From Mytilus trossulus (Eukaryota): a stretch of 64,000 bases of DNA. Shown piece by piece: positions 71 through 64,000 of this stretch. The translations under genes were made by a program, and so were the position numbers. The notes under the pieces are model-generated. The model saw only the letters and a program-made list of their open reading frames with translations, was not told the DNA's origin and made no database searches. The stretch lies in NCBI RefSeq assembly GCF_036588685.1, contig NC_086381.1:3906001-3970000 (forward strand). The letters are read 5' to 3'. Position 1 is the stretch's first letter, and every line of letters starts with the position of its first letter.

Positions 71-1147
71 ACTCACCTAATCCACCATAATTAATACCAG
101 ACGAAGGATCCACATGATCTACAATTAACCCATCAGATGTGAATGTAGTGTGGACTTACCTAATACATTATAAACAATGCATGATGATAGATCCACATGA
201 TCGACAATGAATCTATCAGATGTGAATGTAGTGTGGACTTACCTAATCCATCATAAACAAAGCCAGATGATGGATCCACATGATCCACAATGAATCTATC
301 AGATGTGAATGTAGTGTGGACTTACCTAATCCATCATAAACAAAGCCAGATGATGGATCCACATGATCCACAATGAATCCATCAGATGTGAATGTAGTAT
401 GGACTCACCTAACCCATCATAAACAATAGCAGACGAAGGATCCACATGATCCACAATGAATCCATAAGATGTGAATGTAGTGTGGACTTACCTAATCCAT
501 CATAAACAATGCAAGATGATGGATCCACATGATCCGCAATGAATCCATAGGATGTGGATGAAGTGTGGACTTACCTAATCCATCATAAACAATGCCAGAT
601 GATGGATCCACATGATCCACAATGAATCCATCAGATGTGGATGTAGTGTGGGCTTACCTAATCCATCATAAACAATGCCAGATGATGGATCCACATGATC
701 CACAATGAATCCATCAGATGTGAATGTAGTGTGGACTTACCTAATCCATCATAAACAATGCCAGATGGTGGATCCACATGATCCACAATGAATCCATCAG
801 ATGTGAATGTAGTGTGGACTTACCTAATCCATCATAAACAATGCCAGATGATGGATCCACATGATCCACAATGAATCCATCATATGTGGATGTAGTGTGG
901 ACTTACCTAATCCATCATAAACAATGCTAGATGATAGATCCACATGATCCACAATGAATCCATCAGATGTGGATGTAGTGTGGACTTACCTTTCCATCAT
1001 AAACAATGCCAGATGATAGATCCACATGATCCACAATGAATCCATCATATGTGGATGTAGTGTGGACTTACCTAATCCATCATAAACAATGCCAGATGAT
1101 GGATCCACATGATCCACAATGAATCCATCAGATGTGGATGTAGTGTG
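71..1147 (-). repeat. 83-bp tandem array, 13 copies = 3' end of exon 27 + splice donor
   Basis: Donor motif recurs at 73,156,239...986,1068. Confidence 0.95.
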
Positions 1148-1275
1148 GGCTCCAGCATGGTTATAAGCTATGACATTAGAGTAATATCTAACACCAGGTA
1201 TCAGGCTGATTCTAGACATATTGTATCCTGTGGCTGTCCCTGGTATAGCCTCTGGTATGGTCAGGATATCATAAC
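1072..1275 (-). CDS. Exon 27 (YDILTIPE...VDHVDPSSGIVYDGL), phase 1-1
   Basis: TTTATAG acceptor, G|GTAAGT donor; edge copy of the 83-bp array. Confidence 0.85.
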
Positions 1276-4200
1276 CTATAAACACATAAAATCACTGATA
1301 ATAATGGCAGATCAAAGCATTATATATCAGATTAAATCTAGACATATTGTATCCTGTGGCTGTCCCTGATATTACCTCTGGTATTGCCAGGGTATCATAA
1401 CTTTAAACACATAAAATCACTGATATAATTAATGGCAGATCATAGCATTAGATATCAGGTTAAATCTAGACATATTGTATCCTGTGGCTGTCCCTGATAT
1501 TACCTCTGGTATTGTCAGGATATCATAATCTATAATCACATAAAACCATTGATATAATGGCAGATCATAGCATTAGATATCCGATTGAATCTAGACATAT
1601 AATGCAAATGTTTGCACCTGCCCTAAGTCAGGAATCTGATGTACAGTAGTTGTCGTTTGATTATGTTATTTATACGTGTTTCTCCTTTCTCGTTTTTTAA
1701 TATAAACTAGACCGTTGGTTTTCCCGTTTGAATGGTTTTACACTAGTAATTTGGGGGCCCTTTATAGCTTGTTGTTCGGGTTGAGCCAAGGCTCCGTGTT
1801 GAAGGCCGTACATTGACCTATAATGGTTTACTTTTTTAAATTGTTATTTGGATGGAGAGTTGTCTCATTGACACTCACACCACATCTTCCTATATCAATA
1901 TAATGACTTGTATAAGGCAAATCTTAGCATTACATTTCAGATGACGCTGCTTCTTGTATATCTAGCTACATTATTGTTTGGATGTCATAAGCTTTAAATA
2001 TGTTAAATTATATCATATCACCAACTCTATTTGGCTATACATTTTGTCCCCTCTTCAATGTTTGTTCTAATTTTTAGGACTTTCAATCTTATTAGCCTTG
2101 CGCATTACTGAAAGATGAAAATGGTAAACATACGCAGTTGTTGCAAAAAATATTTGTTCCAGTACTTGAGTACTGAAATGCAGATAATGAAAATATAAAG
2201 ATTGAACGAGTACAGATCCCGCTGTTTTGTTTAGACCCTTTTAATCATTTATCTCTTTATTTTATTTTAGAATCAAGTTTTGTTCTTAAGGTAAGCATGT
2301 TTTACTGTATTGATTGTCTACAAACAAATATAAATCCTCTCTTTTTCCTTTTTTTGTTTTTTAGGTCAAACTACAAAATAAGAAAACACTCAAGACATAT
2401 TGTACCCTGTTGGTGTACATACATGTTAGGTTTATCGACCTAGGCTTATATTAAGACATAACTTTTTATTTTCATTATCAGCATGGGCATTATGAACAGA
2501 GCTCCTAATTATGGAGGAACGTTCCTACACTCCAAAATTCGAGTCGGTTACACACTCTTCAGTTTCTAGTTCAATACCTTGAAACCTTTGTAAATGTAAA
2601 TTTTTGAACTAGAAAATAGTGTTGTCTATGATTTGATAATTCATAATGATGTTTTCCATTTGGGACGGTGTTGTATTATATTTTATGATTTTTATCTCAG
2701 AGAGTTTTCTATTCTTTGATTTATTTTTTGATACAAATGGCACCTTTAAGAACTTAAGACAGGAGGTTAATTTTGTTCAGTTCATATTTATTCTAATTCT
2801 AGCTTCTCTGTGTATGCAGCATAGTGTTGACCATACTCAAAATCTAACTACTAAATCTAAACAAAATGAATTGTCTGTGTATCAAACTATTGTGGTAATC
2901 AGGTTAAGATGAATTCCATATATATATATATATATATATAAAGGTGTGGAATAAGTGCAAATTAGACAACTATCCATCCAAATCACAATTTGTATAAGGT
3001 AAACCTTTATTGGTCAAAGTACTGACAGCCTTCGCCACGGTATCTTGGTTAACGGTCATATTGACCATTTACTGACCTCCTGGAAACGAACTAAGATACA
3101 GTCTGTATTTTTCTATCGTTGCCTCAGTATTCAGGAATTTATTTTTCCATTTGAAGGTTATAGGTCGTCCTATCCTCATGTAATCGTCATCTTTAGCTGT
3201 TGTGCCTTGCACATTCTCTGTTACCTATCAATATGTTTATCATTGTTTATGTTTGTTAAAAGAAATATAAATTTCATTAAAGATTTCAAAGACTTCCATT
3301 TTATTACTGAAAATGTGTACACAAAATTACGAAAAAACATGTTATAAGGGAAAAGGAGACAAGAATTACCAAACAATATGAAACACTACAATTGGCCATA
3401 CCAACCAAACAACACACAACTATTTTAAGAAAAGTTAAATTCATATAAGATGCGAAGGAACGACGCATATTGCCCTGCTCGTAAAGCTTGAAGCAATTTT
3501 TCGGAATAGAAATTTTAAAATTATGAACCCCGAAATATCGGCATAATCAGCAAACGGATTCAAACGAAATCTCATTCTGTTATTCTCATAGAGGACTCTG
3601 ATACTTAAAGTTAGCTCAATATATGAAGGCGTTTACAAACCAGTCTGACGTGTTCAACTGTTTTTCACAAATTTTCAAAATTTAAAGCAGTAATGTTGCA
3701 AAAACATCAGTGGAGAAAAGACAAACGTAATCTCAATCTGCACCCATCATAGTAGACTCACATACATGAAAGTCCGATTAACAGTTCTTTACATAATGAC
3801 AGAATGACGAAATGACGGAACGATAGATAAGGTTAACACTATATGGCCCGGACTACAGTATGCGGGTGATAATATCCAAACACCACGGCATATGGTATAG
3901 AAAACAAGACTTCATAATTCCAAACGATTTTTCCAATTAGAATTAAGCGTTTCATTAAAATTTACCGGAAAAATTACCGAAACAGTATAATGTCAATTAA
4001 ATTAACAATACCAAACTCAATATTTTCATATTTTAGAAATCTTTAAGGTTTATTAAATATATATAGTTAATATATCATACTTTCAGAAATAGAAACTGAA
4101 CGCTTATTCATATGAATTCTTTCAGAAAATATTCATTTAAAATGCTTATATATAAATGCTATTGGAAAATATTCATTTGTCAATTTCATTTCTTGCATTT

Positions 4201-7200: not shown

Positions 7201-10200
7201 GAAAATAAATGTCCATCACAATATAAAACAATGAAAGAAAGAGTACAGACATGAAAAAACCCAATTCAAATAACAGTCATACAGTCATATATGAAAATCA
7301 GTCGGTCGTTCCCTAACTTCATAGAGTTGAAGAAGATATACATCTATAATGTTTGGTGGTGTAAACGTCTTGAAATGATTATGACATGCTATTTGTTTGA
7401 TACATCGGCAAATGTGCCCGGAGTTCAGAACTATAATTGTTTTTGTCTTGTCTGAAACATTTGTGATGATGTCAACAATTGCTTGGCATGTTTAGTGTAA
7501 CACATATTTTTTTACCTTTGAAATTTGCAGAATTTTTACCATCACTGATTATTTAAACACCAAGTACATACTTCTTGTTATACATTAAACTTACTTTTAT
7601 GCACCAATAACGGACTTTAACATATTCTGTCCAGCACTAAATCACTATTTAACATGTTAATAGAATATCAACTCTAGAACTGAGATTGGTATCTCTACTA
7701 TTTGACACAAAAGTACAGTTATCGAAAGATTGTACTACATTGTAAGTTGCACCAACACAATGCAATGTGCACTATAGTGATATACTTACTATCTGATTTA
7801 TCAATACAGCCACCCAACGTTTGGGAATATGGACATTTTTGGTCCTGTGGAGCACAAACACAGTGACCTTCACACGAAAGAGCATCACATCTTCTCATTA
7901 ACTCTAAAGAGCTTGGTGGAGTCTTTGTAAAGGCTGAATGGACCATATGACTTCGCAAACCAACCTTTAAGGAAAATTTCAAGAAATGTGCCTGTATGTA
8001 TTTTCGTAATTACATAAAAAATTTAAGCAATTGTATTATAGGTAACCTCCATGATTAGAAAATTATACTTATTCATTAATATTAAACAAAATAACAAAAA
8101 GATTATCCCTGTCTTCCAAGAAGGTTATTCAATTCAGTTCAATATAAACTACAAAATTATAATTAAGGTTTTTCTAAATAGAAAAGGCTAATTCAAATTT
8201 AAGTATTAAAAGGTTTGTCAGAAAGAAAAATACTTTTTCAAACCAGTTCTTTAAAACACTGAAATGGTGGGTTTGAATATTGGCCAGGAACAATTTAGTT
8301 TGGGTTCACATAGGGATTTCCTTTTTTGCTCAATGGATACTTTTATGTGTAGTGTTTTATGAACCAGTGTTTGCCTTTTCTACTTTTCTCTTTTAGCTAT
8401 GCATTATCATAGAGCGAGAAGTCCATTTCTTACTTTAGTATGGAAAAGATGTTTCTCCTTTATCCAAATATATTCAAAATTTTTTTGAAATCAGAAACAT
8501 AACTATGAACGTCCTACCGACTATACTACTATTTCATACAAACCTTATTTACAGCCCAGACAGTAATAAACAGTTCATCATAATTTGTCAGTTTTTCAGT
8601 CGCGACTTTATGCAGTTGAACTTTGCCCTCATCACCATGATCAGTGTTTGTTTCAACATGAATGTACTTAGCCGTGTGATCCTAATTAGGTATAAAAATT
8701 TATATTAAATTGATAATAACAAGATATTATACATTATTATATGAGCTACGTCACAATAATTATACCCAATATCCAAAATAACAAGTCACAAAATGCAGCA
8801 TTTCCAGATAAATCTTTGAGCAAATTAATTAAGAGGGTACTTCCTATAACTGTATCCTTCCACTCACCTTAGTCTAATCTTTAGCCATGTATGATGATCA
8901 TACAGTGACCATATAATGATCTATCTGTGAATGGATATCACTGAATCCTAGCCATGCCAGGTAACCCCTATAACCGTATCGTTCAACTCACCTTAGTCAA
9001 ATCTTTAGTCATGTATGATGAACCTACAGTGACCATATAATGGTCTATCTGTGAATGGATATCACTGAATCCTAGCCATGCCAGGTAACCCCTATAACCG
9101 TATCGTTCAACTCACCTTGGTCAAATCTTTAGCCATGTATGATGATCCTACAGTGACCATATAATGATCTATCTGTGAATGGATATCACTGAATCCTAGC
9201 CATGCCAGGTAACCCCTATAACCTTATCCTTCCACTCACCTTAGTCAAATCTTTAGTCATGTATGATGAACCTACAGTGACCATATAATGGTCTATCTGT
9301 GAATAGATATCACTGAATCCTAGCCATGACAGGTACCCCTATAACTGTATCCTTCCACTCACCTTGGTCAAATCTTTAGCCATATATGATGACCCTACAG
9401 TGACCATATAATGATCTATCTTTGAATGCATATCACTGAATTCTAGCCATGCCAGGTACCCCTATAACTGTATCCTTCCACTCACCTTGGTCAAATCTTT
9501 AGCCATGTATGATGACCCTACAGTGACCATATAATGATCTATCTTTGAATGGATATCACTGAATCCGAGCCAGGCCAGGTAAACAGCATAAGTCCCCCAG
9601 GTCATCCATCCTGTTTCGTTCCTGGCCAAGTCTAGATCAACTGCATGGTCTGTTGACATTGCAAAAGTTCCTAATGGAATAAAATTCAGCAAATTGATAA
9701 AGTTTAAAAACGATGTAGCACGTATTAAATGTGTGTACCATCATTGCTTATCCTTCTAGAGCACCTAACATTTACCCATTTTTTTTGGAGTAGGGGATAG
9801 TTTTGTTCAGGGCATACAATACAGTTTTGATCCCGTACTTAAATTTTCATGAAAATTTGCATGTAGGCTAATTTTTACCTGATTTTATCAAATATGTAAT
9901 AAAAAATATACCTTCATGTGCTACTTTTTGAGTAAATTGAGGTTCAAATTTCAGAAATTTCCTAAAAATACGGATTTGTGGACGTATTTTTCCTTTCGAT
10001 AGAAATACATAACTTTTTTGTTTTAAAAGATACACACGATCTGTTTTTGTTAAATTATTTGGAATCTATGTGTTATATATATATTGCATAAATTTTGTAC
10101 ATTTTATTTTAACAAAATTAATAACTCAAATTAATCAAATGATCATGAATGTAGTAAAAACGCGTCATTTGTTGCTGTATATAAATCAAATTAAAAAAAA

Positions 10201-52200: not shown

Positions 52201-54264
52201 GGACGGAAGAACGGAAGATACCAAAGGGATAGTCAAACTCATAAATCTAAAACAAACTGACAACGCCATGGCTAAAAATGAAAAAGACAAACAGAAAAAC
52301 AATAGTACACATGACACAACATAGAAAACTAAAGAATAAACAACACGAACCCCTCCAAAAACTAGGGGTGATCTCAGGTGCTCCGGAAGGGTAAGCAGAT
52401 CCTGCTCCACATGTGGCACCCGTCGTGTTGCTTATGTGATTACAAATCCGGTAAATAGTCTAATTCGGTAGGTCACATTCATGAAAGGGAAGGGGATTGT
52501 AGTTACGACGTAAGGAACATATCCGATATCATTTGTGAAATGGTTATTCCATAACGGTCAACCAACTCGTGATGGCGTCCGTAAAATTTACGAAGGGATG
52601 ATTTCAACTTCACCATTTGGAACTCTTGGTTTTAATAGCTTCCATGTAAGCAGCAACCCTCTATCAAGAAAATCATGATAGGAAATGCAAGCACGGGAAT
52701 ATCGTATCAATTGGGAGATATATACCCCGTATGCAGGTGCTGCTGGAATGTTGCTACTTAGAAATGGAAAGTTCACAATTGGAAAGCTGAAATCATCTCT
52801 TTTGTCGTAAAGTTTTGTTTTCAACCTACCCTCATTGTCAATTTCTAGATGTAAGTCAAGATATGAAGCCGACTTAACTGTATCTGTAGTATCCTTTATC
52901 TCTAGTTCGATGGGATAGATTCGTTCCACATAGTCACCAAATTTTGAATTGTTTAGTGAAAGAACATCATCTATATAGCGGAAAGTAGAGTTAAAGGATA
53001 CCAATTGTGAAGTTAGGGATCTAAGGGGAAGTTCATACCTCCATATTATTTAAAATATTCAAATGAAAACAAAGTACTTGGCATGCTTAAATATTGTAAT
53101 AGTAATGTGCTGTCTAAGCTGTCAATTTTTATTCAAAAGGTAGAAAAGATGCTCGTCTAACTTAAAACTGTAATAAACACAGAATTATTTCTAAAGATGT
53201 ATAATTTAAAAATGTATACTGTTTGTATTGTGAACTATGTTGTAATTATTATTGTGTATAATATGCTCCTGTTACGCAGTCTTCTGCGGCTGAGTTTTCT
53301 TTAATAAACTATAAACTATAAGTAAAGAAAATGTACATCAATTTTTGACATAATCACTTATAAAGTATGTTTGATTTGCACATACACAGTTGTCAATATA
53401 TAACAATATTGTATAATACAATAATGTAAGCGACTGCTTAACAAGTAAAATAATTCGCTTGTTATAAAACCATAATACATCCCCCTTTTTCTACATTCGG
53501 AAATGATTGTTATAAGTAAGGACTCGGGACTTGGATTTTGGTATGTTTGTCATTTGTTAACCATTGTTTTGTTAAACCAAAGTAGAATAAAAACTTTGTT
53601 TAACCTTTATAGAACAGAAAAAATGTCCTCGCTAACATAACACACATACTTATGCCTTCTTGGCGCAAAATTCAATGTCTTTTTTTTTTAAACAAAGTCA
53701 ATTATTTCACAATGGTTATTAAACGTCAATTGTCTTGTCCATGTTAATTTTTAATCTAGAACAAATTGTGGTTATCAACTAAGAGGCAGCTGTTGTAGCA
53801 GAAAAGCAGAAAGACAATTATGATCCTTATTTCCAAGTTATAATATGTGCCGTTTCCTTGTTAAGTTGCAGATTCACAGTTGATTTTATTGTTAAATATA
53901 AACAACAACATGAGATGTTTACGTAAACAGAACACATGTTAAATCCAATGTCATTTTTGACAGTAACAAGTCCGGCTTTTTGTACCATGCATGTGTTGAT
54001 CTTTGTTGTTTTTGTATGCATTACAATTTGCATTCGTGTTAGAATTGATAAACTTAGATAGACATTATTTGCTTTGTCGAAACCAATGATAAAGAACATA
54101 CCGACGGCAAACTGATAGTCCAGTGTAAACAATTCCTCACTGTCAGACACAGCTGCACCAGGCCATGTGGTGACCAGATAATCCCCTGACAACTCTACTG
54201 TAAATATACCACTACCTCCAACAATCTCTGGTGGTGTCGTGTCCATGAAACAGGGACCTAAGGT
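1072..54264 (-). CDS. Large multi-exon gene (27 exons in window, ~1567 aa, 5' and 3' incomplete) encoding an uncharacterised protein of tandem fibronectin type-III-like modules
   Basis: 27 exons read manually, all with AG/GT boundaries and mutually compatible phases, summing to 4702 nt with no stop. Recurrent module pattern WxGFxDxxSGI..Y.W.VG..PG..DI ... YY..V.A.N.AG ... SDG..VDxTPP. Domain call is pattern recognition, not a database hit. Confidence 0.9.
1212..1600 (-). repeat. ~128-bp tandem triplication of the exon 27 acceptor and 5' part
   Basis: ctagacatattgtatcctgtggctgtccctg...ggcagatc three times plus a fragment. Confidence 0.85.
2918..2940. repeat. (TA)n microsatellite
   Basis: atatatatat run. 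Confidence 0.9.
3077..3224 (-). CDS. Exon 26 (VTENVQGTTAKDDDY...SSFPG), phase 0-1
   Basis: TGATAG acceptor, G|GTCAGT donor; not in ORF track, translated manually. Confidence 0.85.
4333..4475 (-). CDS. Exon 25 (KDLLINTF...VRGTA), phase 1-0
   Basis: AACAG acceptor, GCT|GTAAGT donor. Confidence 0.85.
5148..5269 (-). CDS. Exon 24 (YEWSVGYADR...FTIGP), phase 2-1
   Basis: TGTAG acceptor, G|GTAAAA donor. Confidence 0.85.
5540..5960 (+). repeat. Interspersed repeat of the hammerhead-bearing family, core degenerate
   Basis: Shares tagccgtatttggcacaacttttt...caactttgtacttg with 23808-23975; core reads CTAGTAA rather than CTGATGA. Confidence 0.65.
6100..6503 (+). repeat. Interspersed repeat ending GTATACTACTGTTGCCTTTATTT
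   Basis: Reverse-strand relatives at ~27955-28150 and ~41620-41720. Confidence 0.65.
6911..7055 (-). CDS. Exon 23 (VFSGTQY...LRATWQ...KPK), phase 1-2
   Basis: TTTTGTAG acceptor, TG|GTAAGT donor. Confidence 0.85.
7790..7964 (-). CDS. Exon 22, Cys-rich (VGLRSHMVHS...CEGHCVCAP...DKSD), phase 0-1
   Basis: TTAAAG acceptor, A|GTAAGT donor; an additional phase-0 exon before it cannot be excluded. Confidence 0.8.
8836..9581 (-). repeat. 123-124-bp tandem array, 6 copies = 3' part of exon 21 + donor GTGAGT
   Basis: tcacc donor motif at 8864, 8988, 9112, 9236, 9359, 9482. Confidence 0.95.
9486..9670 (-). CDS. Exon 21 (TFAMSTDH...AKDLTK), phase 1-0
   Basis: CCATTAG acceptor, AAG|GTGAGT donor; edge copy of the 124-bp array. 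Confidence 0.85.
9810..10433. mobile_element. MITE with 17-bp TIRs and TTAA-like target site (Kolobok/piggyBac-type)
   Basis: GGGCATACAATACAGTT ... AACTGTATCATATGCCC (2 mismatches), flanked by TTCA and TTAA. Confidence 0.75.
11274..15217 (-). repeat. 58-bp tandem array, ~68 copies = 3' end of exon 20 + donor GTTTGT
   Basis: Unit aaacctctagatggtggtgtactgtctacaaacatccccttggaggtagaagtaatac. Confidence 0.97.
15163..15316 (-). CDS. Exon 20 (VNGIARSY...VDSTPPSR), phase 0-1
   Basis: TTCCAG acceptor, G|GTTTGT donor; edge copy of the 58-bp array. Confidence 0.85.
15557..17357 (+). mobile_element. Non-autonomous Helentron-associated element (HINE/DINE-1-like) with internal ~480-500-bp tandem repeats
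   Basis: 5' TTAGCTCACCT...GTGAGCT, (GTCC/GTC)n microsatellite, ~3 internal repeats, 3' palindrome AGGCTCTTAAGAGCCT-CTAGTT; inserted at a T-run. Confidence 0.8.
18316..18545 (-). CDS. Exon 19 (LWSESSSNGFIVDNTPP...SSQS), phase 1-0
   Basis: TTTTAG acceptor, TCA|GTAAGT donor. Confidence 0.9.
19642..19862 (-). CDS. Exon 18 (IYISAKWYGFDDPQSG...AYNKA), phase 2-1
   Basis: TTCACAG acceptor, G|GTATGT donor. Confidence 0.9.
20352..20538 (-). CDS. Exon 17 (FTLRNIHLGTG...IDNSPP...YQSM), phase 1-2
   Basis: TTTCAG acceptor, AC|GTATGT donor. Confidence 0.9.
21926..22202 (-). CDS. Exon 16 (AFNKAGLSS...VDTTPP...VGITY), phase 0-1
   Basis: TTTAG acceptor, G|GTATGT donor. Confidence 0.9.
22588..22771 (-). CDS. 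Exon 15 (WKGVFLDLESGI...YYINVR), phase 2-0
   Basis: TTCCAG acceptor, AGG|GTTAGT donor. Confidence 0.85.
22915..23070. repeat. Degenerate ~30-bp tandem repeat
   Basis: tatttgaacaactaaacatatttggctg-like units. Confidence 0.6.
23454..23589 (-). CDS. Exon 14 (VDFANRET...IDNTPP...EISP), phase 1-2
   Basis: TTTTAG acceptor, TG|GTGAGT donor. Confidence 0.85.
23900..23941 (+). ncRNA. Minimal type-I hammerhead ribozyme motif (Penelope-type)
   Basis: CGTCA-CTGATGA-GTC..GAC-GAAA-CGCGGGTC-TGGA. Confidence 0.65.
24706..25540. mobile_element. Putative non-autonomous element with 150-nt terminal hairpin and 13-bp inverted repeats
   Basis: Palindrome 24706-24856; CTTTATCCTGCAA (24855) / TTGCAGGATAAAG (25528-25540). 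Confidence 0.55.
25997..26038 (+). ncRNA. Minimal type-I hammerhead ribozyme motif, stem II mismatched
   Basis: TGTCA-CTGATGA-GTC..GTC-GAAA-CGCGCGTC-TGGCG. Confidence 0.6.
26172..26288 (-). CDS. Exon 13 (TISGGNDV...YYATLK), phase 1-1
   Basis: TTTCAG acceptor, G|GTATCT donor. Confidence 0.8.
26944..27049 (-). CDS. Exon 12 (TTVTDLYINWDGFHD...LLGI), phase 0-1
   Basis: TTACAG acceptor, G|GTAAGT donor. Confidence 0.85.
27478..27695 (-). CDS. Exon 11 (KEFINVKF...VDLTPP...QIYQ), phase 1-0
   Basis: TTTAG acceptor, CAG|GTAGGA donor. Confidence 0.85.
28193..28432 (-). CDS. Exon 10 (DIGKPVVLKQNALW...KCGHT), phase 1-1
   Basis: TTTCAG acceptor, G|GTATAT donor. Confidence 0.85.
28456..35385 (-). repeat. 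85-bp tandem array, ~81 copies = 3' end of exon 9 + donor GTAAGT
   Basis: 85-bp periodicity; unit translates DCQAFNPILIHPNIVIDAVGAPDSN then GTAAGT. Confidence 0.97.
35306..35495 (-). CDS. Exon 9 (ILFEYVLNG...DAVGAPDSN), phase 0-1
   Basis: TTTCAG acceptor, G|GTAAGT donor; edge copy of the 85-bp array. Confidence 0.85.
35878..36039 (-). CDS. Exon 8 (LMVSFAQFYDPD...AIGHQ), phase 0-0
   Basis: TTCCAG acceptor, CAG|GTACAT donor. Confidence 0.85.
36366..41586. mobile_element. Non-coding element with split direct repeats A1...B1-A2-B2 (Ngaro/VIPER-like layout)
   Basis: A1 36366-36754 matches A2 40855-41243; B1 40577-40855 matches B2 41308-41586. Confidence 0.6.
37760..38160. repeat. Degenerate tandem repeat (~70-120-bp units)
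   Basis: cagaggtcgtagtagcttggtctatga and tatgcttcgtcatgaaactcatg each recur about 4 times. Confidence 0.75.
42686..42921 (-). CDS. Exon 7 (QWSIFRDF...GGAEK), phase 1-0
   Basis: TTTCAG acceptor, AAA|GTAAGT donor. Confidence 0.85.
44109..44250 (-). CDS. Exon 6 (DHRLSCSDDVDIQ...RSGVG), phase 0-1
   Basis: TTTAG acceptor, A|GTAAGC donor. Confidence 0.85.
44477..45127. repeat. ~56-67-bp minisatellite, ~11 copies, not exon-derived
   Basis: ggaactcctatatagtgatagttgttttataccgcttgtcgaattcactcgttgtt repeated. Confidence 0.9.
45613..45638 (-). CDS. Exon 5, 26-nt micro-exon (DKSLEHHME), phase 1-0
   Basis: TCTTTTTCAG acceptor, GAG|GTTAGT donor; bridges phase-1 exon 4 to phase-0 exon 6. Confidence 0.65.
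46186..46321 (-). CDS. Exon 4 (KYYFTVTALNTVG...GEPCYMI), phase 0-1
   Basis: TTTTAG acceptor, G|GTAAGT donor; manual translation. Confidence 0.85.
46727..46924 (-). CDS. Exon 3 (DIQDLDFQTSTT...LTPYQ), phase 0-0
   Basis: TTTTAG acceptor, CAG|GTAATA donor. Confidence 0.85.
47575..49500 (-). mobile_element. 5'-truncated Penelope-like retroelement: RT ORF (48219-49436) plus ~640-bp 3' region
   Basis: RT motifs SFDFSTLYT, QIIGIPMGTNCAPLIADLFL, RYLDD and thumb DKRDDFSFPIVNYPF...YGVYISQL; upstream KLHK/PYKYRFI remnant; decayed copy of the 3' region at ~41730-42350. Confidence 0.85.
50426..50682 (-). CDS. Exon 2 (HSAYGTDVQGF...VVLDIDTQ), phase 1-0
   Basis: TACAG acceptor, CAG|GTACAC donor; within ORF 50402..50698. 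Confidence 0.85.
51480..53180 (+). pseudogene. Decayed non-LTR (LINE) ORF2 C-terminal fragment, split by the 52195-53004 element
   Basis: Frame-broken remnants LKLFDALVVPILTYSSEIWG, MVYGEL, QDQFIQKW, PIETGRWRKVPRNERICPLC; resumes near 53005. Confidence 0.65.
52195..53004 (-). mobile_element. Second Penelope-like RT family, 3' fragment (YIDD) with 3' region
   Basis: RYIDDVL...LYDKRDDFSFPIVNFPFLSSNIP. Its 3' region recurs on + at ~15391-15556/17358-17610, 19070-19415, 26345-26560, 43700-43995 and 50715-50990. Confidence 0.85.
54102..54264 (-). CDS. Exon 1 in window (TLGPCFMDTTPPEIVGG...DYQFAV), phase 0-1
   Basis: TTTCTATTTCAG acceptor, G|GTATGT donor; edge copy of the 151-bp array. Confidence 0.85.
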
Positions 54265-57200
54265 CTGAAATAGAAAGAAACAACTCTTCACTGTCAGACA
54301 CAGCTGCACCAGGCCATGTGGTGACCAGATACTCTCCTGACAACTATAATGTAAATATACCACTACCGCCAACAATCTCTGGTGGTGTCGTGTCCATGAA
54401 ACAGGGACATAAGGTCTGAAATAGAAAGAAACAACTCTTCACTGTCAGACACAGCTGCACCAGGCCATGTGGTGACCAGATAATCCCCTGACAACTCTAC
54501 TGTAAATATACCACTACCTCCAACAATCTCTGGTGGTGTCGTGTCCATGAAACAGGGACCTAAGGTCTGAAATAGAAAGAAACAATTCTTCACTGTCATA
54601 CACAGCTGTACCAGGCCATGTGGTGACCAGATACTCCCCTGACAACTCTACTGTAAATATACCACTACCTCCAACAATCTCTGGTGGTGTCGTGTCCATG
54701 AAACAGGGACCTAAGGTCTGAAATAGAAAGAAACAATTCTTCACTGTCAGACACAGCTGCACCAGGCCATGTGGTGACCAGATAATCTCCTGACAACTTT
54801 ACTGTAAATATACCACTACCTCCAACAATCTCTGGTGGTGTCGTGTCCATGAAACAGGGACCTAAGGTCTGAAATAGAAAGAAACAATTCCTCACTGTCA
54901 GACACAGCTGCACCAGGCCATGTGGTGACCAGATACTCTCCTGACAACTCTACTGTAAATATACCACTACCTCCAACAATCTCTGGTGGTGTCGTGTCCA
55001 TGAAACAGGGACCTAAGGTCTGAAATAGAAAGAAACAATTCCTCACTGTCAGACACAGCTCCACCAGGCCATGTGGTGACCAGATAATCCCCTGACATTT
55101 GTACTGTAAATATACCACTACCTCCAACAATCTCTGGTGGTGTCGTGTCCATGAAACACGGACCTAAGGTCTAAAATAGAAAGAAACAATTCTTCACTGT
55201 CAGACACAGCTCCACCAGGCCATGTGGTGACCAGATACTCTCCTGACAACTCTACTGTAAATATACCACTACCTCCAACAATCTCTGGTGGTGTCGTGTC
55301 CATGAAACAGGGACCTAAGGTCTGAAATAGAAAGAAACAATTCTTCACTGTCAGACACAGCTGTACCAGGCCATGTGGTGATCAGATAATCCCCTGACAA
55401 CTCTACTGTAAATATACCACTACCTCCAACAATCTCTGGTGGTGTCGTGTCCATGAAACAGGGACCTAAGGTCTGAAATAGAAAGAAACAATTCCTCACT
55501 GTCAGACACAGCTCCACCAGGCCATGTGGTGACCAGATAATCCCCTGACATTTGTACTGTAAATATACCACTACCTCCAACAATCTCTGGTGGTGTCGTG
55601 TCCATGAAACAGGGACCTAAGGTCTGAAATAGAAAGAAACAACTCTTCACTGTCAGACACAGCTATAAACTTCAAGATTATAAAAAACCGGTTTTTTTCT
55701 AAAGTGAACATTGATTGGTTAAATATTTCTCAGTGTGTTTGAATTTGTTTGATAGCCTTTTGGTCATTACTGTTTGTCTCTAATATTTAATTAACTGTGC
55801 ATTTGTATTCAGATATCGCAGATCAAATTTATTCGTTCTTTGTGTAATCATACGTTTTTTGATTGAGTTAAGTCTGCTAATTGATATTTTATCGTATGTT
55901 TTTATATGTTGTGATATTATGCTATTGTTTCAGAAAAAGGGAGAAGGTTTGGGCCCATTAAAACGTTTAATCCCGCTGCAAATGTTTGCACCTGTCCTAA
56001 GTCAGGAATCTGATGTACAGTAGTTGTCGTTTGTTTATGTAATATATACGTGTTTCTCGTTTCTCGTTTTGTTTATATAGATTAGACCGTTGGTTTTCCC
56101 GTTTGAATGGTTTTACACTAGTAATTTTGGGGCCCTTTATAGCTTGTTGTTCGGTGTGAGCCAAGGCTCCGTGTTGAAGGCCGTACTTTAACCTATAATG
56201 GTTTAATTTTTAAATTGTTATTTGGATGGAGAGTTGTCTCATTGGCACTCACACCACATCTTCCTATATCTACAGCTGCACCAGGCCATGTGGTGACCAG
56301 ATAATCCCCTGACAACTCTACTGTAAATATACCACTACCTTCAACAATCTCTGGGGGTGTGGTGTCCATGAAACAGGGACCTAAGGTCTGAAATAGAAAG
56401 AAACAATTCTTCACTGTCAGACACAGCTGCACCAGGCCATGTGGTGACCAGATAATCCCCTGACAACTCTACTGTAAATATACCACTACCTCCAACAATC
56501 TCTGGGGGTGTCGTGCCCATGAAACAGGGACCTAAGGTCTGAAATAGAAAGAAACAATTCTTCACTGTCAGACACAGCTGCACCAGGCCATGTGGTGACC
56601 AGATAATCCCCTGACAACTCTACTGTAAATATACCACTACCTCCAACAATCTCTGGTGGTGTCGTGTCCATGAAACAGGGACCTAAGGTCTGAAATAGAA
56701 AGAAACAACTCTTCACTGTCAGACACAGCTCCACCAGGCCATGTGGTGACCAGATACTCCCCTGACAACTCTACTGTAAATATACCACTACCTCCAACTA
56801 TCTCTGGTGGTGTCGTGTCCATGAAACAGGGACCTAAGGTCTGAAATAGAAAGAAACAATTCTTCACTGTCAGACACAGCTGTACCAGGCCATGTGGTGA
56901 TCAGATAATCCCCTGACAACTCTACTGTAAATATACCACTACCTCCAACAATCTCTGGTGGTGTCGTGTCCATGAAACAGGGACCTAAGGTCTGAAATAG
57001 AAAGAAACAATTCTTCACTGTCAGACACAGCTGTACCAGGCCATGTGGTGACCAGATACTCTCCTGACAACTCTACTATAAATATACCACTGCCTCCAAC
57101 TATCTCTGGTGGTGTCGTGTCCATGAAACACGGACCTAAGGTCTGAAATAGTAAGAAACAATTCTTCACTGTCAGACACAGCTGTACCAGGCCATGTGGT

Positions 57201-60200
57201 GACCAGATACTCTCCTGACAACTCTACTATAAATATACCACTGCCTCCAACTATCTCTGGTGGTGTGGTGTCCATGAAACAGGGACCTAAGGTCTAAAAT
57301 AGAAAGAAACAATTCTTCACTGTCAGACACAGCTGTACCAGGCCATGTGGTGACCAGATACTCCCCTGACAACTGTACTGTAAATATACCACTACCTCCA
57401 ACAATCTCTGGTGGTGTCGTGTCCATGAAACAGGGACCTAAGGTCTAAAATAGAAAGAAACAATTCTTCACTGTCAGACACAGCTGTACCAGGCCATGTG
57501 GTGACTAGATACTCCCCTGACAACTCTACTGTAAATATACCACTACCTCCAACAATCTCTGGTGGTGTCGTGTCCATGAAACAGGGACCTAAGGTCTAAA
57601 ATAGAAAGAAACAACTCTTCACTGTCAGACACAGCTATACCAGGCCATGTGGTGACCAGATACTCCCCTGACAACTCTACTATAAATATACCACTACCTC
57701 CAACAATCTCTGGGGGTGTAGTGTCCATGAAACAGGGACCTAAGGTCTAAAATAGAAAGAAACAACTCTTCACTGTCAGACACAGCTCCACCAGGCCATG
57801 TGGTGACCAGATACTCTCCTGACAACTCTACTGCAAATATACCACTACCTCCAACAATCTCTGGGGGTGTAGTGTCCATGAAACAGGGACCTAAGGTCTG
57901 AAATAGAAAGAAACAATTCTTCACTGTCAGACACAGCTGTACCAGGCCATGTGGTGACCAGATACTCCCCTGACAACTTTACTGTAAATATACCACTACC
58001 TCCAACTATCTCTGATGGTGTAGTGTCCATGAAACAGGGACCTAAGGTCTGAAATAGAAAGAAACAATTCCTCACTGTCAGACACAGCTCCACCAGGCCA
58101 TGTGGTGACTAGATACTCCCCTGACAACTCTACTATAAATATACCACTACCTCCAACAATCTCTGGTGGTGTCGTGTCCATGAAACAGGGACCTAAGGTC
58201 TGAAATAGAAAGAAACAATTCTTCACTGTCAGACACAGCTGTACCAGGCCATGTGGTGACCAGATACTCCCCTGACAACTCTACTGTAAATATACCACTA
58301 CCTCCAACAATCTCTGGTGGTGTCGTGTCCATGAAACAGGGACCTAAGGTCTGAAATAGAAAGAAACAATTCTTCACTGTCAGACACAGCTCCACCAGGC
58401 CATGTGGTGACCAGATACTCTCCTGACAACTCTACTATAAATATACCACTGCCTCCAACTATCTCTGGTGGTGTCGTGTCCATGAAACACGGACCTAAGG
58501 TCTGAAATAGTAAGAAACAATTCTTCACTGTCAGACACAGCTGTACCAGGCCATGTGGTGACCAGATACTCTCCTGACAACTCTACTATAAATATACCAC
58601 TGCCTCCAACTATCTCTGGTGGTGTGGTGTCCATGAAACAGGGACCTAAGGTCTAAAATAGAAAGAAACAATTCTTCACTGTCAGACACAGCTGTACCAG
58701 GCCATGTGGTGACCAGATACTCCCCTGACAACTGTACTGTAAATATACCACTACCTCCAACAATCTCTGGTGGTGTCGTGTCCATGAAACAGGGACCTAA
58801 GGTCTAAAATAGAAAGAAACAATTCTTCACTGTCAGACACAGCTGTACCAGGCCATGTGGTGACTAGATACTCCCCTGACAACTCTACTGTAAATATACC
58901 ACTACCTCCAACAATCTCTGGTGGTGTCGTGTCCATGAAACAGGGACCTAAGGTCTAAAATAGAAAGAAACAACTCTTCACTGTCAGACACAGCTATACC
59001 AGGCCATGTGGTGACCAGATACTCCCCTGACAACTCTACTATAAATATACCACTACCTCCAACAATCTCTGGGGGTGTAGTGTCCATGAAACAGGGACCT
59101 AAGGTCTAAAATAGAAAGAAACAACTCTTCACTGTCAGACACAGCTCCACCAGGCCATGTGGTGACCAGATACTCTCCTGACAACTCTACTGCAAATATA
59201 CCACTACCTCCAACAATCTCTGGGGGTGTAGTGTCCATGAAACAGGGACCTAAGGTCTGAAATAGAAAGAAACAATTCTTCACTGTCAGACACAGCTGTA
59301 CCAGGCCATGTGGTGACCAGATACTCCCCTGACAACTTTACTGTAAATATACCACTACCTCCAACTATCTCTGATGGTGTAGTGTCCATGAAACAGGGAC
59401 CTAAGGTCTGAAATAGAAAGAAACAATTCCTCACTGTCAGACACAGCTCCACCAGGCCATGTGGTGACTAGATACTCCCCTGACAACTCTACTATAAATA
59501 TACCACTACCTCCAACAATCTCTGGTGGTGTCGTGTCCATGAAACAGGGACCTAAGGTCTGAAATAGAAAGAAACAATTCTTCACTGTCAGACACAGCTG
59601 TACCAGGCCATGTGGTGACCAGATACTCCCCTGACAACTCTACTGTAAATATACCACTACCTCCAACAATCTCTGGTGGTGTCGTGTCCATGAAACAGGG
59701 ACCTAAGGTCTGAAATAGAAAGAAACAATTCTTCACTGTCAGACACAGCTCCACCAGGCCATGTGGTGACCAGATACTCTCCTGACAACTCTACTGTAAA
59801 TATACCACTACCTCCAACAATCTCTGGTGGTGTCGTGTCCATGAAACACGGACCTAAGGTCTAAAATAGAAAGAAACAATTCTTCACTGTCAGACACAGC
59901 TGTACCAGGCCATGTGGTGACCAGATAATCTCCTGACAACTGTACTGTAAATATACCACTACCTCCAACAATCTCTGGTGGTGTCGTGTCCATGAAACAG
60001 GGACCTAAGGTCTAAAATAGAAAGAAACAACTCTTCACTGTCAGACACAGCTGTACCAGGCCATGTGGTGACTAGATAATCTCCTGACAACTCTACTGTA
60101 AATATACCACTACCGCCAACAATCTCTGGTGGTGTCGTGTCCATGAAACAGGGACCTAAGGTCTGAAATAGAAAGAAACAATTCTTCACTGTCAGACACA

Positions 60201-63200
60201 GCTGTACCAGGCCATGTGGTGACTAGATACTCTCCTGACAACTCTACTGTAAATATACCACTTCCTCCAACAATCTCTGGTGGTGTCTTGTCCATGAAAC
60301 AGGGACCTAAGGTCTGAAATAGAAAGAAACAATTCCTCACTGTCAGACACAGCTGTACCAGGCCATGTGGTGACCAGATAATCCCCTGACAACTCTACTG
60401 TAAATATACCACTACCTCCAACAATCTCTGGTGGTGTCGTGTCCATGAAACAGGGACCTAAGGTCTGAAATAGAAAGAAACAATTCCTCACTGTCAGACA
60501 CAGCTGTACCAGGCCATGTGGTGACCAGATACTCCCCTGACAACTCTACAGTAAATATACCACTACCTCCAACAATCTCTGGGGGTGTAGTGTCCATGAA
60601 ACAGGGACCTAAGGTCTGAAATAGAAAGAAACAATTCTTCACTGTCAGACACAGCTGTACCAGGCCATGTGGTGACCAGATAATCCCCTGACAACTCTAC
60701 TGTAAATATACCACTTCCTCCAACAATCTCTGGTGGTGTCGTGTCCATGAAACACGGACCTAAGGTCTGAAATAGAAAGAAACAATTCTTCACTGTCAGA
60801 CACAGCTGTACCAGGCCATGTGGTGACCAGATACTCCCCTGACAACTGTACTGTAAATATACCACTACCTCCAACAATCTCTGGTGGTGTCGTGTCCATG
60901 AAACAGGGACCTAAGGTCTGAAATAGAAAGAAACAATTGTTCACTGTCAGACACAGCTGTACCAGGCCATGTGGTGACCAGATACTCCCCTGACAACTCT
61001 ACTGTAAATATACCACTACCTCCAACAATATCTGGTGGTGTCGTGTCCATGAAACAGGGACCTAAGGTCTGAAATAGAAAGAAACAATTCTTCACTGTCA
61101 GACACAGCTGTACCAGGCCATGTGGTGACTAGATACTCCCCTGACAACTCTACTGTAAATATACCACTACCTCCAACAATCTCTGGTGGTGTCGTGTCCA
61201 TGAAACAGGGACCTAAGGTCTGAAATAGAAAGAAACAATTCTTCACTGTCAGACACAGCTCCACCAGGCCATGTGGTGACCAGATACTCCCCTGACAACT
61301 CTACTGTAAATATACTACTACCTCCAACAATCTCTGGGGGTGTGGTGTCCATGAAACAGGGACCTAAGGTCTGAAATAGAAAGAAACAATTCTTCACTGT
61401 CAGACACAGCTGTACCAGGCCATGTGGTGACCAGATACTCCCCTGACAACTCTACTGTAAATATACTACTACCTCCAACAATCTCTGGGGGTGTGGTGTC
61501 CATGAAACAGGGACCTAAGGTCTGAAATAGAAAGAAACAATTCTTCACTGTCAGACACAGCTGTACCAGGCCATGTGGTGACTAGATACTCCCCTGACAA
61601 CTCTACTGTAAATATACCACTACCTCCAACAATCTCTGGTGGTGTAGTGTCCATGAAACAGGGACCTAAGGTCTAAAATAGAAAGAAACAATTCTTCACT
61701 GTCAGACACAGCTCCACCAGGCCATGTGGTGACCAGATACTCTCCTGACAACTCTACTGTAAATATACCACTACCTCCAACTATCTCTGGTGGTGTAGTG
61801 TCCATGAAACACGGACCTAAGGTCTAAAATAGAAAGAAACAATTCTTCACTGTCAGACACAGCTCCACCAGGCCATGTGGTGACCAGATAATCTCCTGAC
61901 AACTCTACTGTAAATATACCACTACCTCCAACAATCTCTGGTGGTGTCGTGTCCATGAAATAGGGACCTAAGGTCTGAAATAGAAAGAAACAACTCTTCA
62001 CTGTCAGACACAGCTGTACCAGGCCATGAAGTGACCAGATACTCCCCTGACAACTTTACTGTAAATATACCACTTCCTCCAACAATCTCTGGTGGTGTGG
62101 TGTCCATGAAACAGGGACCTAAGGTCTGAAATAGAAAGAAACAATTCTTCACTGTCAGACACAGCTGTACCAGGCCATGTGGTGACCAGATAATCCCCTG
62201 ACAACTCTACTGTAAATATACCACTTCCTCCAACAATCTCTGGTGGTGTGGTGTCCAAGAAACAGGGACCTAAGGTCTGAAATAGAAAGAAACAATTCTT
62301 CACTGTCAGACACAGCTGTACCAGGCCATGTGGTGACCAGATACTCCCCTGACAACTCTACTATAAATATACCACTTCCTCCAACAATCTCTGGTGGTGT
62401 CGTGTCCATGAAACAGGGACCTAAGGTCTGAAATAGTAAGAAACAATTCTTCACTGTCATACACAGCTGCACCAGGCCATGTGGTGACTAGATAATCCCC
62501 TGACAACTCTACTGTAAATATACCACTACCTCCAACAATCTCTGGTGGTGTCGTGTCCATGAAACAGGGACCTAAGGTCTGAAATAGAAAGAAACAATTC
62601 TTCACTGTCAGACACAGCTCCACCAGGCCATGTGGTGACCAGATACTCTCCTGACAACTCTACTGTAAATATACCACTACCTCCAACAATCTCTGGTGGT
62701 GTAGTGTCCATGAAACAGGGACCTAAGGTCTGAAATAGAAAGAAACAATTCTTCACTGTCAGACACAGCTGTACCAGGCCATGTGGTGACCAGATAATCT
62801 CCTGACAACTGTACTGTAAATATACCACTACCTCCAACAATCTCTGGTGGTGTCGTGTCCATGAAACAGGGACCTAAGGTCTAAAATAGAAAGAAACAAT
62901 TCTTCACTGTCAGACACAGCTCCACCAGGCCATGTGGTGACCAGATACTCTCCTGACAACTCTACTGTAAATATACCACTACCTCCAACTATCTCTGGTG
63001 GTGTCGTGTCCATGAAACAGGGACCTAAGGTCTGAAATAGAAAGAAACAACTCTTCACTGTCAGACACAGCTGTACCAGGCCATGAAGTGACCAGATACT
63101 CCCCTGACAACTTTACTGTAAATATACCACTTCCTCCAACAATCTCTGGTGGTGTGGTGTCCAAGAAACAGGGACCTAAGGTCTGAAATAGTAAGAAACA

Positions 63201-64000
63201 ATTCTTCACTGTCATACACAGCTGCACCAGGCCATGTGGTGACTAGATAATCCCCTGACAACTCTACTGTAAATATACCACTACCTCCAACAATCTCTGG
63301 TGGTGTGGTGTCCATGAAACAGGGACCTAAGGTCTGAAATAGAAAGAAACAATTCTTCACTGTCAGACACAGCTGTACCAGGCCATGTGGTGACCAGATA
63401 ATCTCCTGACAACTGTACTGTAAATATACCACTACCTCCAACAATCTCTGGTGGTGTCGTGTCCATGAAACAGGGACCTAAGGTCTAAAATAGAAAGAAA
63501 CAACTCTTCACTGTCAGACACAGCTGTACCAGGCCATGTGGTGACTAGATAATCTCCTGACAACTCTACTGTAAATATACCACTACCGCCAACAATCTCT
63601 GGTGGTGTCGTGTCCATGAAACAGGGACCTAAGGTCTGAAATAGAAAGAAACAATTCTTCACTGTCAGACACAGCTGTACCAGGCCATGTGGTGACTAGA
63701 TACTCTCCTGACAACTCTACTGTAAATATACCACTTCCTCCAACAATCTCTGGTGGTGTCTTGTCCATGAAACAGGGACCTAAGGTCTGAAATAGAAAGA
63801 AACAATTCCTCACTGTCAGACACAGCTGTACCAGGCCATGTGGTGACCAGATAATCCCCTGACAACTCTACTGTAAATATACCACTACCTCCAACAATCT
63901 CTGGTGGTGTCGTGTCCATGAAACAGGGACCTAAGGTCTGAAATAGAAAGAAACAATTCCTCACTGTCAGACACAGCTGTACCAGGCCATGTGGTGACCA
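54129..64000 (-). repeat. 151-bp tandem array, ~61 copies in window (runs off the end) = acceptor + 5' 140 nt of exon 1
   Basis: 151-bp periodicity in sequence and ORF track; interrupted at 55665-56271. Confidence 0.97.
55665..56271 (+). mobile_element. 607-bp non-autonomous insertion with 6-bp TSD ACAGCT inside the 151-bp array
   Basis: ACAGCT at 55659-55664 and 56272-56277; same family at 1601-1897 (+) and ~20810-21300, 24378-24585, 45330-45515 (-). Confidence 0.85.

What the first reader, a model, noticed from the sequence alone, without database searches (positions are those of the whole stretch)
71..64000. One gene repeatedly amplifies its own exon/splice-site junctions into tandem arrays, with the working exon as the edge copy
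Seen: five unrelated arrays (83, 124, 58, 85, 151 bp; about a third of the window) each consist of part of an exon plus its splice site. Four carry donors and extend downstream; one carries an acceptor and extends upstream. Smaller or decayed versions flank exons 27, 23, 18 and 17, and possibly 15. The large satellites are thus anchored on splice junctions even though exons are only ~7% of the DNA. Inference: junction duplications are tolerated because use of the nearest site regenerates the normal mRNA. Their density suggests a recurrent junction-focused process or a function as a cassette reservoir. I do not know of this being described as a system, but cannot search.
Basis: partly seen in the sequence, partly recalled or inferred. 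Interest (0 to 1): 0.9.

Follow-up and report, generated by a model that had tools for sequence, protein, structure and literature searches.

The report
Splice-junction ("mirage") minisatellites in a mussel gene
One giant bivalve gene carries at least eleven tandem arrays, each made of an exon edge plus its splice site; this repeat type is already known ("mirages" in amphioxus, a few human genes such as F7), but here it is unusually large, dense and clearly concentrated on exon borders.

Summary
The window holds five large arrays (83, 124, 58, 85 and 151 bp) and a 128-bp one, together 36 % of it. Each unit is an exon end plus its splice site, and the true exon is the edge copy. The gene lies on the minus strand and spans at least 119 kb. 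Across it I count 11 such arrays (7 donor, 4 acceptor) and 8 small or decayed junction duplications on about 80 junction sides.

Within the gene, 11 of 21 arrays are junction-anchored against 2.3 expected (P = 5e-7). Junction segments have a nearby copy eight times more often than intron-interior segments (P = 9e-9). Units are mostly exon sequence. Three donor units carry only the 6-nt splice consensus from the intron.

Boundary-spanning minisatellites are published as "mirages" in amphioxus and for the human genes F7, IFI6, CBS, LMNB2 and PDGFA. For F7, use of the most upstream donor was shown experimentally.

It is probably not specific to this gene. This scan has already flagged the same pattern in many other genes of this genome; I did not re-check those notes.

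The cassette-reservoir idea is mostly contradicted, because 9 of 11 unit lengths are not multiples of 3.

The parts
71..1148 (-). 83-bp x13 donor array. Unit = last 77 nt of exon 34 plus GTAAGT. 13 of 13 copies keep GGTRAG.
1072..1275 (-). Exon 34 (204 nt, module end). Both of its junctions are amplified.
   Evidence: The donor at 1072 is favoured by homology and by the phase of the next exon.
1211..1600 (-). 128-bp x3.1 acceptor array. Unit = about 63 nt of intron end with AG plus the first ~65 nt of exon 34. It extends upstream.
8843..9582 (-). 124-bp x6 donor array. Unit = last 97 nt of exon 30 plus 27 nt of intron. 6 of 6 copies keep AAG|GTGAGT.
9486..9670 (-). Exon 30 (185 nt). Its first donor keeps the frame with exon 31.
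11274..15217 (-). 58-bp x68 donor array. Unit = last 52 nt of exon 29 plus GTTTGT, with a TGT microhomology at the join. 67-68 copies keep the donor; identity is 98.9 %.
15163..15316 (-). Exon 29 (154 nt, phase-out 1). It joins exon 30 (phase-in 2) in frame only from the first donor.
28456..35385 (-). 85-bp x81.6 donor array. Unit = last 79-80 nt of exon 18 plus GTAAGT. It fills the whole intron down to about 20 nt before the next acceptor. 55 copies keep GGTAAG.
35306..35495 (-). Exon 18 (190 nt). Its donor is the first copy of the 85-bp array.
28193..28432 (-). Exon 19. Its acceptor lies about 20 nt after the end of the 85-bp array.
54127..64000 (-). 151-bp acceptor array (about 84 copies, 12.7 kb, continuing to window +66815). 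Unit = 13-19 nt of polypyrimidine tract with AG plus the first 132-138 nt of exon 11. TTGTTT microhomology at the join; 302/453-bp higher-order periodicity.
54102..54264 (-). Exon 11 (163 nt), the last (edge) copy of the 151-bp array. An independent Logan-derived protein (P0166, 93 % identity) reads through the true exon end.
55665..56272 (.). 608-bp mobile element inserted inside a 151-bp unit, with a 6-bp target-site duplication (AGCTGT). A 98.4 % identical full copy lies at window -83425.
19929..20003 (-). Decayed extra copy (91 % identity) of the acceptor junction of exon 27 (19642-19862).
20606..20666 (-). Decayed copy of the acceptor junction of exon 26 (20352-20538).
   Evidence: score 43, z 11.6
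44294..44353 (-). Decayed copy of the acceptor junction of exon 15.
   Evidence: score 40, z 7.7
21564..21592 (-). Weak 29-nt match to the donor junction of exon 25. It may be a chance match.
   Evidence: score 41, z 12

Best explanation
These are 'mirage'-type minisatellites. A short tandem duplication spanning an exon/intron border was expanded by replication slippage or unequal exchange into an array that lies wholly in the intron. The arrays persist because the splicing machinery uses the copy contiguous with the rest of the exon: the most upstream donor, or the acceptor nearest the exon's own donor. The mRNA is therefore unchanged, and the other copies (about 200 decoy donors and 190 decoy acceptors in this pre-mRNA) stay silent or give frame-shifted transcripts that are degraded.

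The excess at junctions is best explained by two factors. First, a duplication process that starts preferentially in exon sequence. Second, a selective filter that lets through only duplications reaching just past a complete splice signal. Duplications wholly inside an exon break the frame and are lost.

Shown here: the anatomy, the retention of splice motifs, frame consistency of the edge copies, the enrichment, the exon-biased unit composition and the age markers. Inferred: the actual splicing choice, the expansion mechanism and the cause of the exon bias.
For: Anatomy: 11 arrays, each unit an exon part plus a splice site, with the true exon as edge copy.

Splice motif kept in most copies: 58d 67-68 of 68, 46a 91 of 95, 59d 53-56 of about 59, 151a 58-64 of 83, 85d 55 of 81, 83d 13 of 13, 124d 6 of 6.

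Frame: the edge sites give phase-consistent joins. 9 of 11 unit lengths are not multiples of 3.

Enrichment: 11 of 21 arrays anchored versus 2.3 expected, P = 5e-7. 19 of 80 junction sides versus 25 of 660 intron tile-sides have a nearby same-strand copy, odds ratio 7.9, P = 9e-9.

Exon bias: 8 of 11 units are more than 75 % exon (P = 0.0012). The intron part is only 5-6 nt in three of the seven donor arrays and 13-19 nt in two of the four acceptor arrays, near the minimum for a working signal.

Symmetry: donor and acceptor sides are affected about equally (7 and 4 arrays; 4 and 4 small duplications). This points to a DNA-level process rather than one tied to the 5' splice site.

Slippage signature: short microhomologies at several unit joins (TGT, TTGTTT, TTTA) and near-integer copy numbers.

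Real and old: a TE with a target-site duplication sits inside an array. Inter-copy divergence is 1-7 % with higher-order periodicity. Homologous 58-bp arrays at 75-82 % identity lie in two paralogous loci.

Literature: F7 and the other human cases, and the scanning choice of the first donor (PMC1557585). Amphioxus mirages at both boundaries, spliced normally, mechanism unclear (PMC3087553; PMC3902484).
Against: Use of the edge copy is therefore inferred from frames and from other species.

Pure neutrality does not explain the 8-fold junction excess, and the exon-centred mutational bias is inferred, not observed.

Slower decay of the selected exon copy could inflate detection by up to about 2-fold.

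The enrichment tests are post hoc and rest on an approximate exon map. One exon was missed by homology and some boundaries outside the window are wrong.

Persistence of the 58-bp array in three paralogues, and the high retention of intact splice motifs, could also be read as maintenance by selection.
Confidence: 0.75

Rival explanations
1. The arrays have a function. They could act as splice-regulatory elements, for example U1-binding decoy donors that protect long introns or strengthen exon definition. Or they could be a reservoir of in-frame cassettes that lengthen the protein.
For: Intact splice motifs are kept in most copies. The 58-bp array is present in three paralogues. The 108-bp unit equals 36 codons and stays open through all 36 copies. 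52 of 81 units of the 85-bp array carry a branch-point-like site, an acceptor-like site, 27 in-frame nt without stops and a donor.
Against: 9 of 11 unit lengths shift the frame. Each unit has only one kind of splice site. The nearest paralogues on C14 lack the 83-, 124-, 151- and 58-bp arrays, so these arrays are dispensable. High motif retention is expected anyway from recent homogenisation (93-99 % identity). The 27-nt configuration lies inside ordinary coding sequence and may be fortuitous. In F7 the pseudo-sites are silent (PMC1557585).
Confidence: 0.1
2. There is no real junction bias. The genome is simply rich in minisatellites, and the apparent anchoring comes from choosing this window after the fact, from the higher GC content of exons and from easier detection of exon-containing repeats.
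For: The window was chosen for the pattern. 15 arrays without splice-like motifs lie in the flanks and about 10 unanchored arrays lie in the gene. The selected exon copy decays more slowly, which favours detection.
Against: The excess is large (P = 5e-7 and 9e-9). It survives a conservative control (odds ratio 4.1, P = 2.5e-5). The anchored arrays are also the largest ones (38.7 kb versus about 9.5 kb). Units are exon-biased with minimal intron parts. Other windows of this genome were flagged independently for the same pattern (unchecked).
Confidence: 0.07
3. The arrays are assembly artefacts, that is, spurious tandem expansion or misplaced haplotype sequence.
For: No raw reads could be examined. 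The 108-bp array has a 97-100 % identical inverted twin 530 kb away that shares neither flank, which could be a misplacement. Ebner et al. noted a mis-assembled mirage in the amphioxus draft genome.
Against: Copies differ by 1-7 % in structured, higher-order patterns. A TE with a target-site duplication is inserted in one array. Diverged homologous arrays exist in paralogues. Eleven different arrays all register exactly on splice junctions, which an assembler cannot know about.
Confidence: 0.04
4. The junction bias comes from a transcription- or splicing-coupled or circle-mediated process. Examples are R-loop-associated breaks at unspliced junctions, or excision of small exon-derived circular DNA followed by rolling-circle copying and reinsertion.
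For: Units are short (46-151 bp), exon-rich and bounded by microhomology. An enrichment of small circular DNAs in exons is reported for mammals; this is from my own recollection and was not checked here.
Against: Arrays sit exactly in register at the parental junction, not at new sites. Donor and acceptor sides are equally affected, so nothing is specific to the 5' splice site. There is no direct evidence of any kind.
Confidence: 0.04

Closest known systems
Amphioxus 'mirages' (Adh3: Canestro et al. 2002, cited in PMC3087553; globins BflGb6/9: Ebner et al. 2010, PMC3087553; PGBD5 and TnC: PMC3902484)
   Same: They are minisatellite-like tandem duplications of an exon/intron boundary, at either the 5' or the 3' boundary. 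Most units keep AG/GT signals and normal splicing is retained. They show concerted evolution within the array and the mechanism is unknown.
   Different: The published cases have 2-6 (globin) or a few tens of units, one or two per gene, in a cephalochordate. Here there are up to 84-95 units and 12.7 kb per array, 11 arrays in one gene (32 % of its span) and two exons amplified on both sides, in a mollusc. Here the enrichment is quantified against an intron control and the units are shown to be exon-biased.
Human boundary-spanning minisatellites: F7 IVS7 (37 bp x5-9), IFI6/6-16 (26 donors), CBS IVS13 (31 bp x15-20), LMNB2 (100 bp x10-15), PDGF intron 4 (81 bp x16-18) (PMC1557585)
   Same: The first monomer spans the exon/intron boundary, so identical donors are reiterated. 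The most upstream donor is used, as shown by 50 constructs for F7. In IFI6 and CBS the next one or two donors are also used.
   Different: These are single loci and donors only. The F7 unit is mostly intron (4 nt exon plus 33 nt intron), whereas the units here are mostly exon. No acceptor arrays or clustering within one gene are described.
Intron gain or extension by tandem genomic duplication (Rogers model; Hellsten et al. 2011, PMC3265369; potato RdRp, PMC4974935)
   Same: The same principle applies: a tandem duplication that contains splice signals is removed by splicing, so the mRNA is restored.
   Different: Those cases create a new intron from a duplicated exonic AGGT. Here existing introns are lengthened by arrays. 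The intron after exon 18 now consists almost entirely of the array.

Membership tests
Mirage / boundary-spanning minisatellite | Head-to-tail tandem repeat with a unit of about 10 bp to a few hundred bp | tested here: met
   TRF finds periods of 46-151 bp, 3-95 copies and 89-98 % matches.
Mirage / boundary-spanning minisatellite | The terminal unit spans an exon/intron boundary, so the splice site is reiterated in the intron | tested here: met
   Direct reading of all 11 arrays and motif counts.
Mirage / boundary-spanning minisatellite | The authentic (edge) site is used and the normal mRNA is made | not testable with these tools
P0166 supports the true exon end only.
Mirage / boundary-spanning minisatellite | Concerted evolution within the array | tested here: met
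   Identity is 93-99 % within arrays but 75-82 % between the homologous 58-bp arrays of paralogues.
Mirage / boundary-spanning minisatellite | Copy-number polymorphism or instability between haplotypes or individuals | not tested
   No second haplotype or reads were available.
Dispersed satellite or transposon-borne tandem repeat | The unit occurs at many unrelated loci | tested here: not met
   Whole-genome searches find each unit only at its own exon, plus single copies or homologous arrays in paralogous genes. The exception is the isolated twin of the 108-bp array.
Coding tandem repeat / cassette-exon array | Units bounded by both an acceptor and a donor, with length a multiple of 3 | tested here: not met
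   Units hold one kind of site only. 9 of 11 lengths are not divisible by 3. A partial exception is the 27-nt configuration in the 85-bp unit.

The most novel reading that the evidence does not exclude
An exon-centred tandem-duplication process operates across this mussel genome, and perhaps in amphioxus too. It would make exon borders the main birthplace of minisatellites and a major driver of intron growth. Pre-mRNAs would then routinely carry hundreds of perfect decoy splice sites that the spliceosome ignores. A minority of arrays (the in-frame 108-bp unit, and the 27-nt micro-exon configuration of the 85-bp unit) might occasionally feed repeated peptides into the protein.
Probability: 0.25. 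Interest if true: 0.7.

Novelty: new member of a known kind. Interest (0 to 1): 0.45.

Why it matters
This locus is a natural experiment in splice-site choice. Up to 95 near-identical decoy sites sit beside a single working one, on both the donor and the acceptor side, and twice on both sides of the same exon. If the junction excess holds genome-wide, it points to an unexplained exon-focused duplication process. It also points to a concrete route by which introns grow: one intron here is now almost entirely array. On the practical side, such arrays will mislead gene predictors, repeat annotation and assemblers in bivalve genomes.

Tried and rejected
The fallback through Pfam-matched exons returned a table but no DNA. 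A genome-wide enrichment test was therefore not possible.
- Pfam on window exons gave nothing above threshold. The EGF-like exon hits EGF_Teneurin only below the cut-off.
- Array ORF as a protein query: it found only P0166, which is the true exon, not an array copy.
- My automated breakpoint script was too tolerant and mis-registered several arrays. Its numbers are discarded in favour of direct reading.
- My first exon chain had errors. A merged 'exon 35' contains stops, several boundaries outside array exons were wrong, and the exon 4 acceptor is at 86038, not 86016. The chain was redone with a stop-free rule for the window.
- The splice-motif regex recovers only 5 of 10 known anchored arrays, so '0 of 15 outside the gene' is only a rough control.
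- The dispersed-satellite or TE-cargo reading is rejected by the whole-genome searches.
Exons were searched one by one by reference and frames were checked by phase arithmetic only.
Full report
**What is there.**
- 83 bp x13 (71-1148)
- 124 bp x6 (8843-9582)
- 58 bp x68 (11274-15217)
- 85 bp x81.6 (28456-35385)
- 151 bp (54127 to the window end)

With a 128-bp x3 array (1211-1600) they make up 35.9 % of the window. All coding signal is on the minus strand. The gene encodes a giant protein built of Ig/FN3-like modules of roughly 180 residues. Its relatives are 2,000-6,800 residues long with up to 22 modules. Some carry Pfam fn3, Ig_J_second or Big_3_3 domains, and at least one relative comes from a bacterial MAG. 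The window's own exons match nothing in Pfam above threshold.

The window is G000:C9:3906001-3970000 in a 1.30-Gb assembly. I fetched 100 kb on each side. tblastn then shows the gene spanning at least 119 kb, from window -17.7 kb to +101.7 kb.

**Anatomy of the arrays.** I read each array edge on the minus strand.

Donor arrays (exon nt + intron nt per unit):
- 83 bp: 77 + 6 (GTAAGT)
- 124 bp: 97 + 27
- 58 bp: 52 + 6 (GTTTGT), with TGT microhomology at the join
- 85 bp: 79-80 + 5-6
- 75 bp: 57 + 18 (window 76286-76849)
- 59 bp x52: 17 + 42 (82185-85703)
- 88 bp x6.8: about 79 + 9 (-17168 to -16573), anchored on an exon that homology had missed

Acceptor arrays (intron nt + exon nt per unit):
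- 128 bp: about 63 + 65
- 151 bp: 13-19 + 132-138, about 84 copies, 12.7 kb, TTGTTT microhomology
- 46 bp x95: 23 + 23 (86010-90391)
- 108 bp x36: 15-19 + 89-93, on an EGF-like exon (94459-98344)

Two exons have both borders amplified: 1072-1275 and 85687-86038. The 85-bp array fills its intron to within about 20 nt of the next acceptor. Most copies keep an intact splice motif. The pre-mRNA should therefore carry roughly 200 decoy donors and 190 decoy acceptors.

**Is the edge copy the working one?** I had no RNA data. Phase arithmetic gives a consistent chain in which the array-flanked exons use the edge sites:
- 35306 to 28432
- 15163 to 9670
- 9486 to 7964
- 54264 after an exon that ends in phase 0
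- 1072 before an exon that starts in phase 2

Nine of the eleven unit lengths are not multiples of 3, so any inner site would shift the frame. An independent Logan-derived protein, P0166 (93 % identity), reads through the true end of exon 11 and not through an array join.

**Is the anchoring more than chance?** I ran three tests.
- Array placement. I collapsed each array to one unit and placed each founding unit at random in the gene. This predicts 2.3 junction-spanning arrays of 21; I observe 11 (P = 5e-7).
- Local duplication rate. I aligned an 85-nt segment across each junction against the adjacent intron. 19 of 80 junction sides have a same-strand copy nearby. For 85-nt tiles from intron interiors the figure is 25 of 660. 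The odds ratio is 7.9 (P = 9e-9), or 4.1 if every unanchored array is added to the control.
- Unit composition. 8 of 11 units are more than 75 % exon (P = 0.0012). In three donor arrays the intron part is exactly the 5-6 nt splice consensus.

Donor and acceptor sides are hit about equally. I read these results as an exon-centred duplication input followed by a filter. Only duplications that reach just past a complete splice signal leave the mRNA intact.

Caveats:
- The tests are post hoc.
- The exon map is approximate outside the array exons.
- Slower decay of the selected exon copy could account for up to about 2-fold of the excess.

**Real or artefact?**
- Copies differ by 1-7 %, and the 151-bp array has 302/453-bp higher-order periodicity.
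- A 608-bp mobile element sits inside a 151-bp unit with a 6-bp target-site duplication. It has a 98.4 % identical copy 139 kb away.
- The 58-bp array has homologous 58-bp-periodic arrays, 2-3 kb long and 75-82 % identical, at C9:28.54 Mb and C9:43.94 Mb. At 43.94 Mb a match to the neighbouring exon lies just beside the array, as at this locus.
- The closest paralogues on C14 (83-88 % identity) hold only single copies of the 83-, 124-, 151- and 58-bp units.

So the arrays are genuine and can be old, but they are dispensable and turn over.

**Comparison with what is known.** The class is published.
- Borensztajn et al. 2006 (PMC1557585) describe the F7 intron 7 minisatellite, whose first monomer spans the exon border. 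They list IFI6, CBS, LMNB2 and PDGF as similar cases. They show that the most upstream donor is chosen by a 5'-to-3' scanning process while the identical pseudo-sites stay silent.
- Ebner et al. 2010 (PMC3087553) and PMC3902484 describe amphioxus 'mirages'. These are tandem duplications of either boundary that do not disturb splicing and are length-unstable, with 'unclear' mechanism. They are proposed as a route to new introns.
- The lead to the word 'mirage' came from earlier notes of this scan. I confirmed it in the papers.
- I found no mollusc or genome-scale description.

What differs here is scale. There are 11 arrays in one gene, 38.7 kb or 32 % of its span, with up to 95 copies and 12.7 kb each. 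Two exons are amplified on both sides. The excess at junctions is quantified and the units are exon-biased.

**Is it one gene?** Probably not. The scan's notes report the same pattern in many unrelated genes of this genome, including a GTPase, symplekin, MPRIP, a rhomboid, TRAPPC1, a myosin and housekeeping genes. I could not re-test these because no further genome DNA could be fetched. In the 144 kb of flanks that I hold, 15 arrays show no splice-like motif (that regex is only about 50 % sensitive). Ordinary minisatellites therefore abound as well.

**Function.** Most units cannot act as cassettes. Two curiosities remain. The 108-bp unit is 36 codons and stays open through all copies. In the 85-bp array, 52 of 81 units carry a branch-point-like site, an acceptor-like site, 27 in-frame nt without stops and a donor. 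Only RNA data can tell whether these are ever used.

**Verdict.** This is a new, extreme member of a known kind.

Noticed in passing
L005:459-4344 (window +94459 to +98344) and G000:C9:3468283-3472157: The 108-bp acceptor array has a 97-100 % identical twin of almost the same length, inverted, about 530 kb away. Neither the upstream flank, nor the 458 bp directly downstream, nor the next 3.6 kb is duplicated there. It is either an isolated array copy or an assembly misplacement.
   Followed up: partly
window 55665-56272; also 1603-1896, 24378-24578; region -84033 to -83425: A 608-bp non-coding mobile element with several copies in the region and a 6-bp target-site duplication. Its 3' part recurs widely.
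   Followed up: partly
G000:C9:28.5 Mb, 43.8-44.0 Mb, 15.77 Mb, 42.0 Mb; G000:C14:20.12-20.31 Mb: Paralogues of this giant modular gene. Two on C9 carry a homologous 58-bp junction array, and one (43.81 Mb) carries 2-3 weak copies of the 85-bp unit. The two C14 copies carry none of the arrays tested.
   Followed up: partly
L005:438-557 (window 94438-94557): The working copy of the EGF-like exon carries an extra 6-nt tandem duplication (GCCAGT, two residues, in frame) that the array copies lack.
   Followed up: no
window 40548-41560: A roughly 730-bp direct segmental duplication inside an intron (about 100 % identity over 170-nt stretches), unrelated to exons.
   Followed up: no
window 15605-15678: A short CGTCGTCCGT-type microsatellite, followed by a 484-bp x2.7 repeat (15808-17135) that looks element-derived.
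   Followed up: no
table, e.g. G000:C7:78.71-78.78 Mb and C10:32.76-32.80 Mb: Tandem clusters of myosin-head exons, that is, several myosin genes side by side. Some matches lie in open frames of about 2,000 residues.
   Followed up: no
L004:6445-6640 and L005:4410-5080: Highly dispersed repeat families, with dozens to hundreds of copies genome-wide at 75-93 % identity, flank the 46-bp and 108-bp arrays.
   Followed up: no
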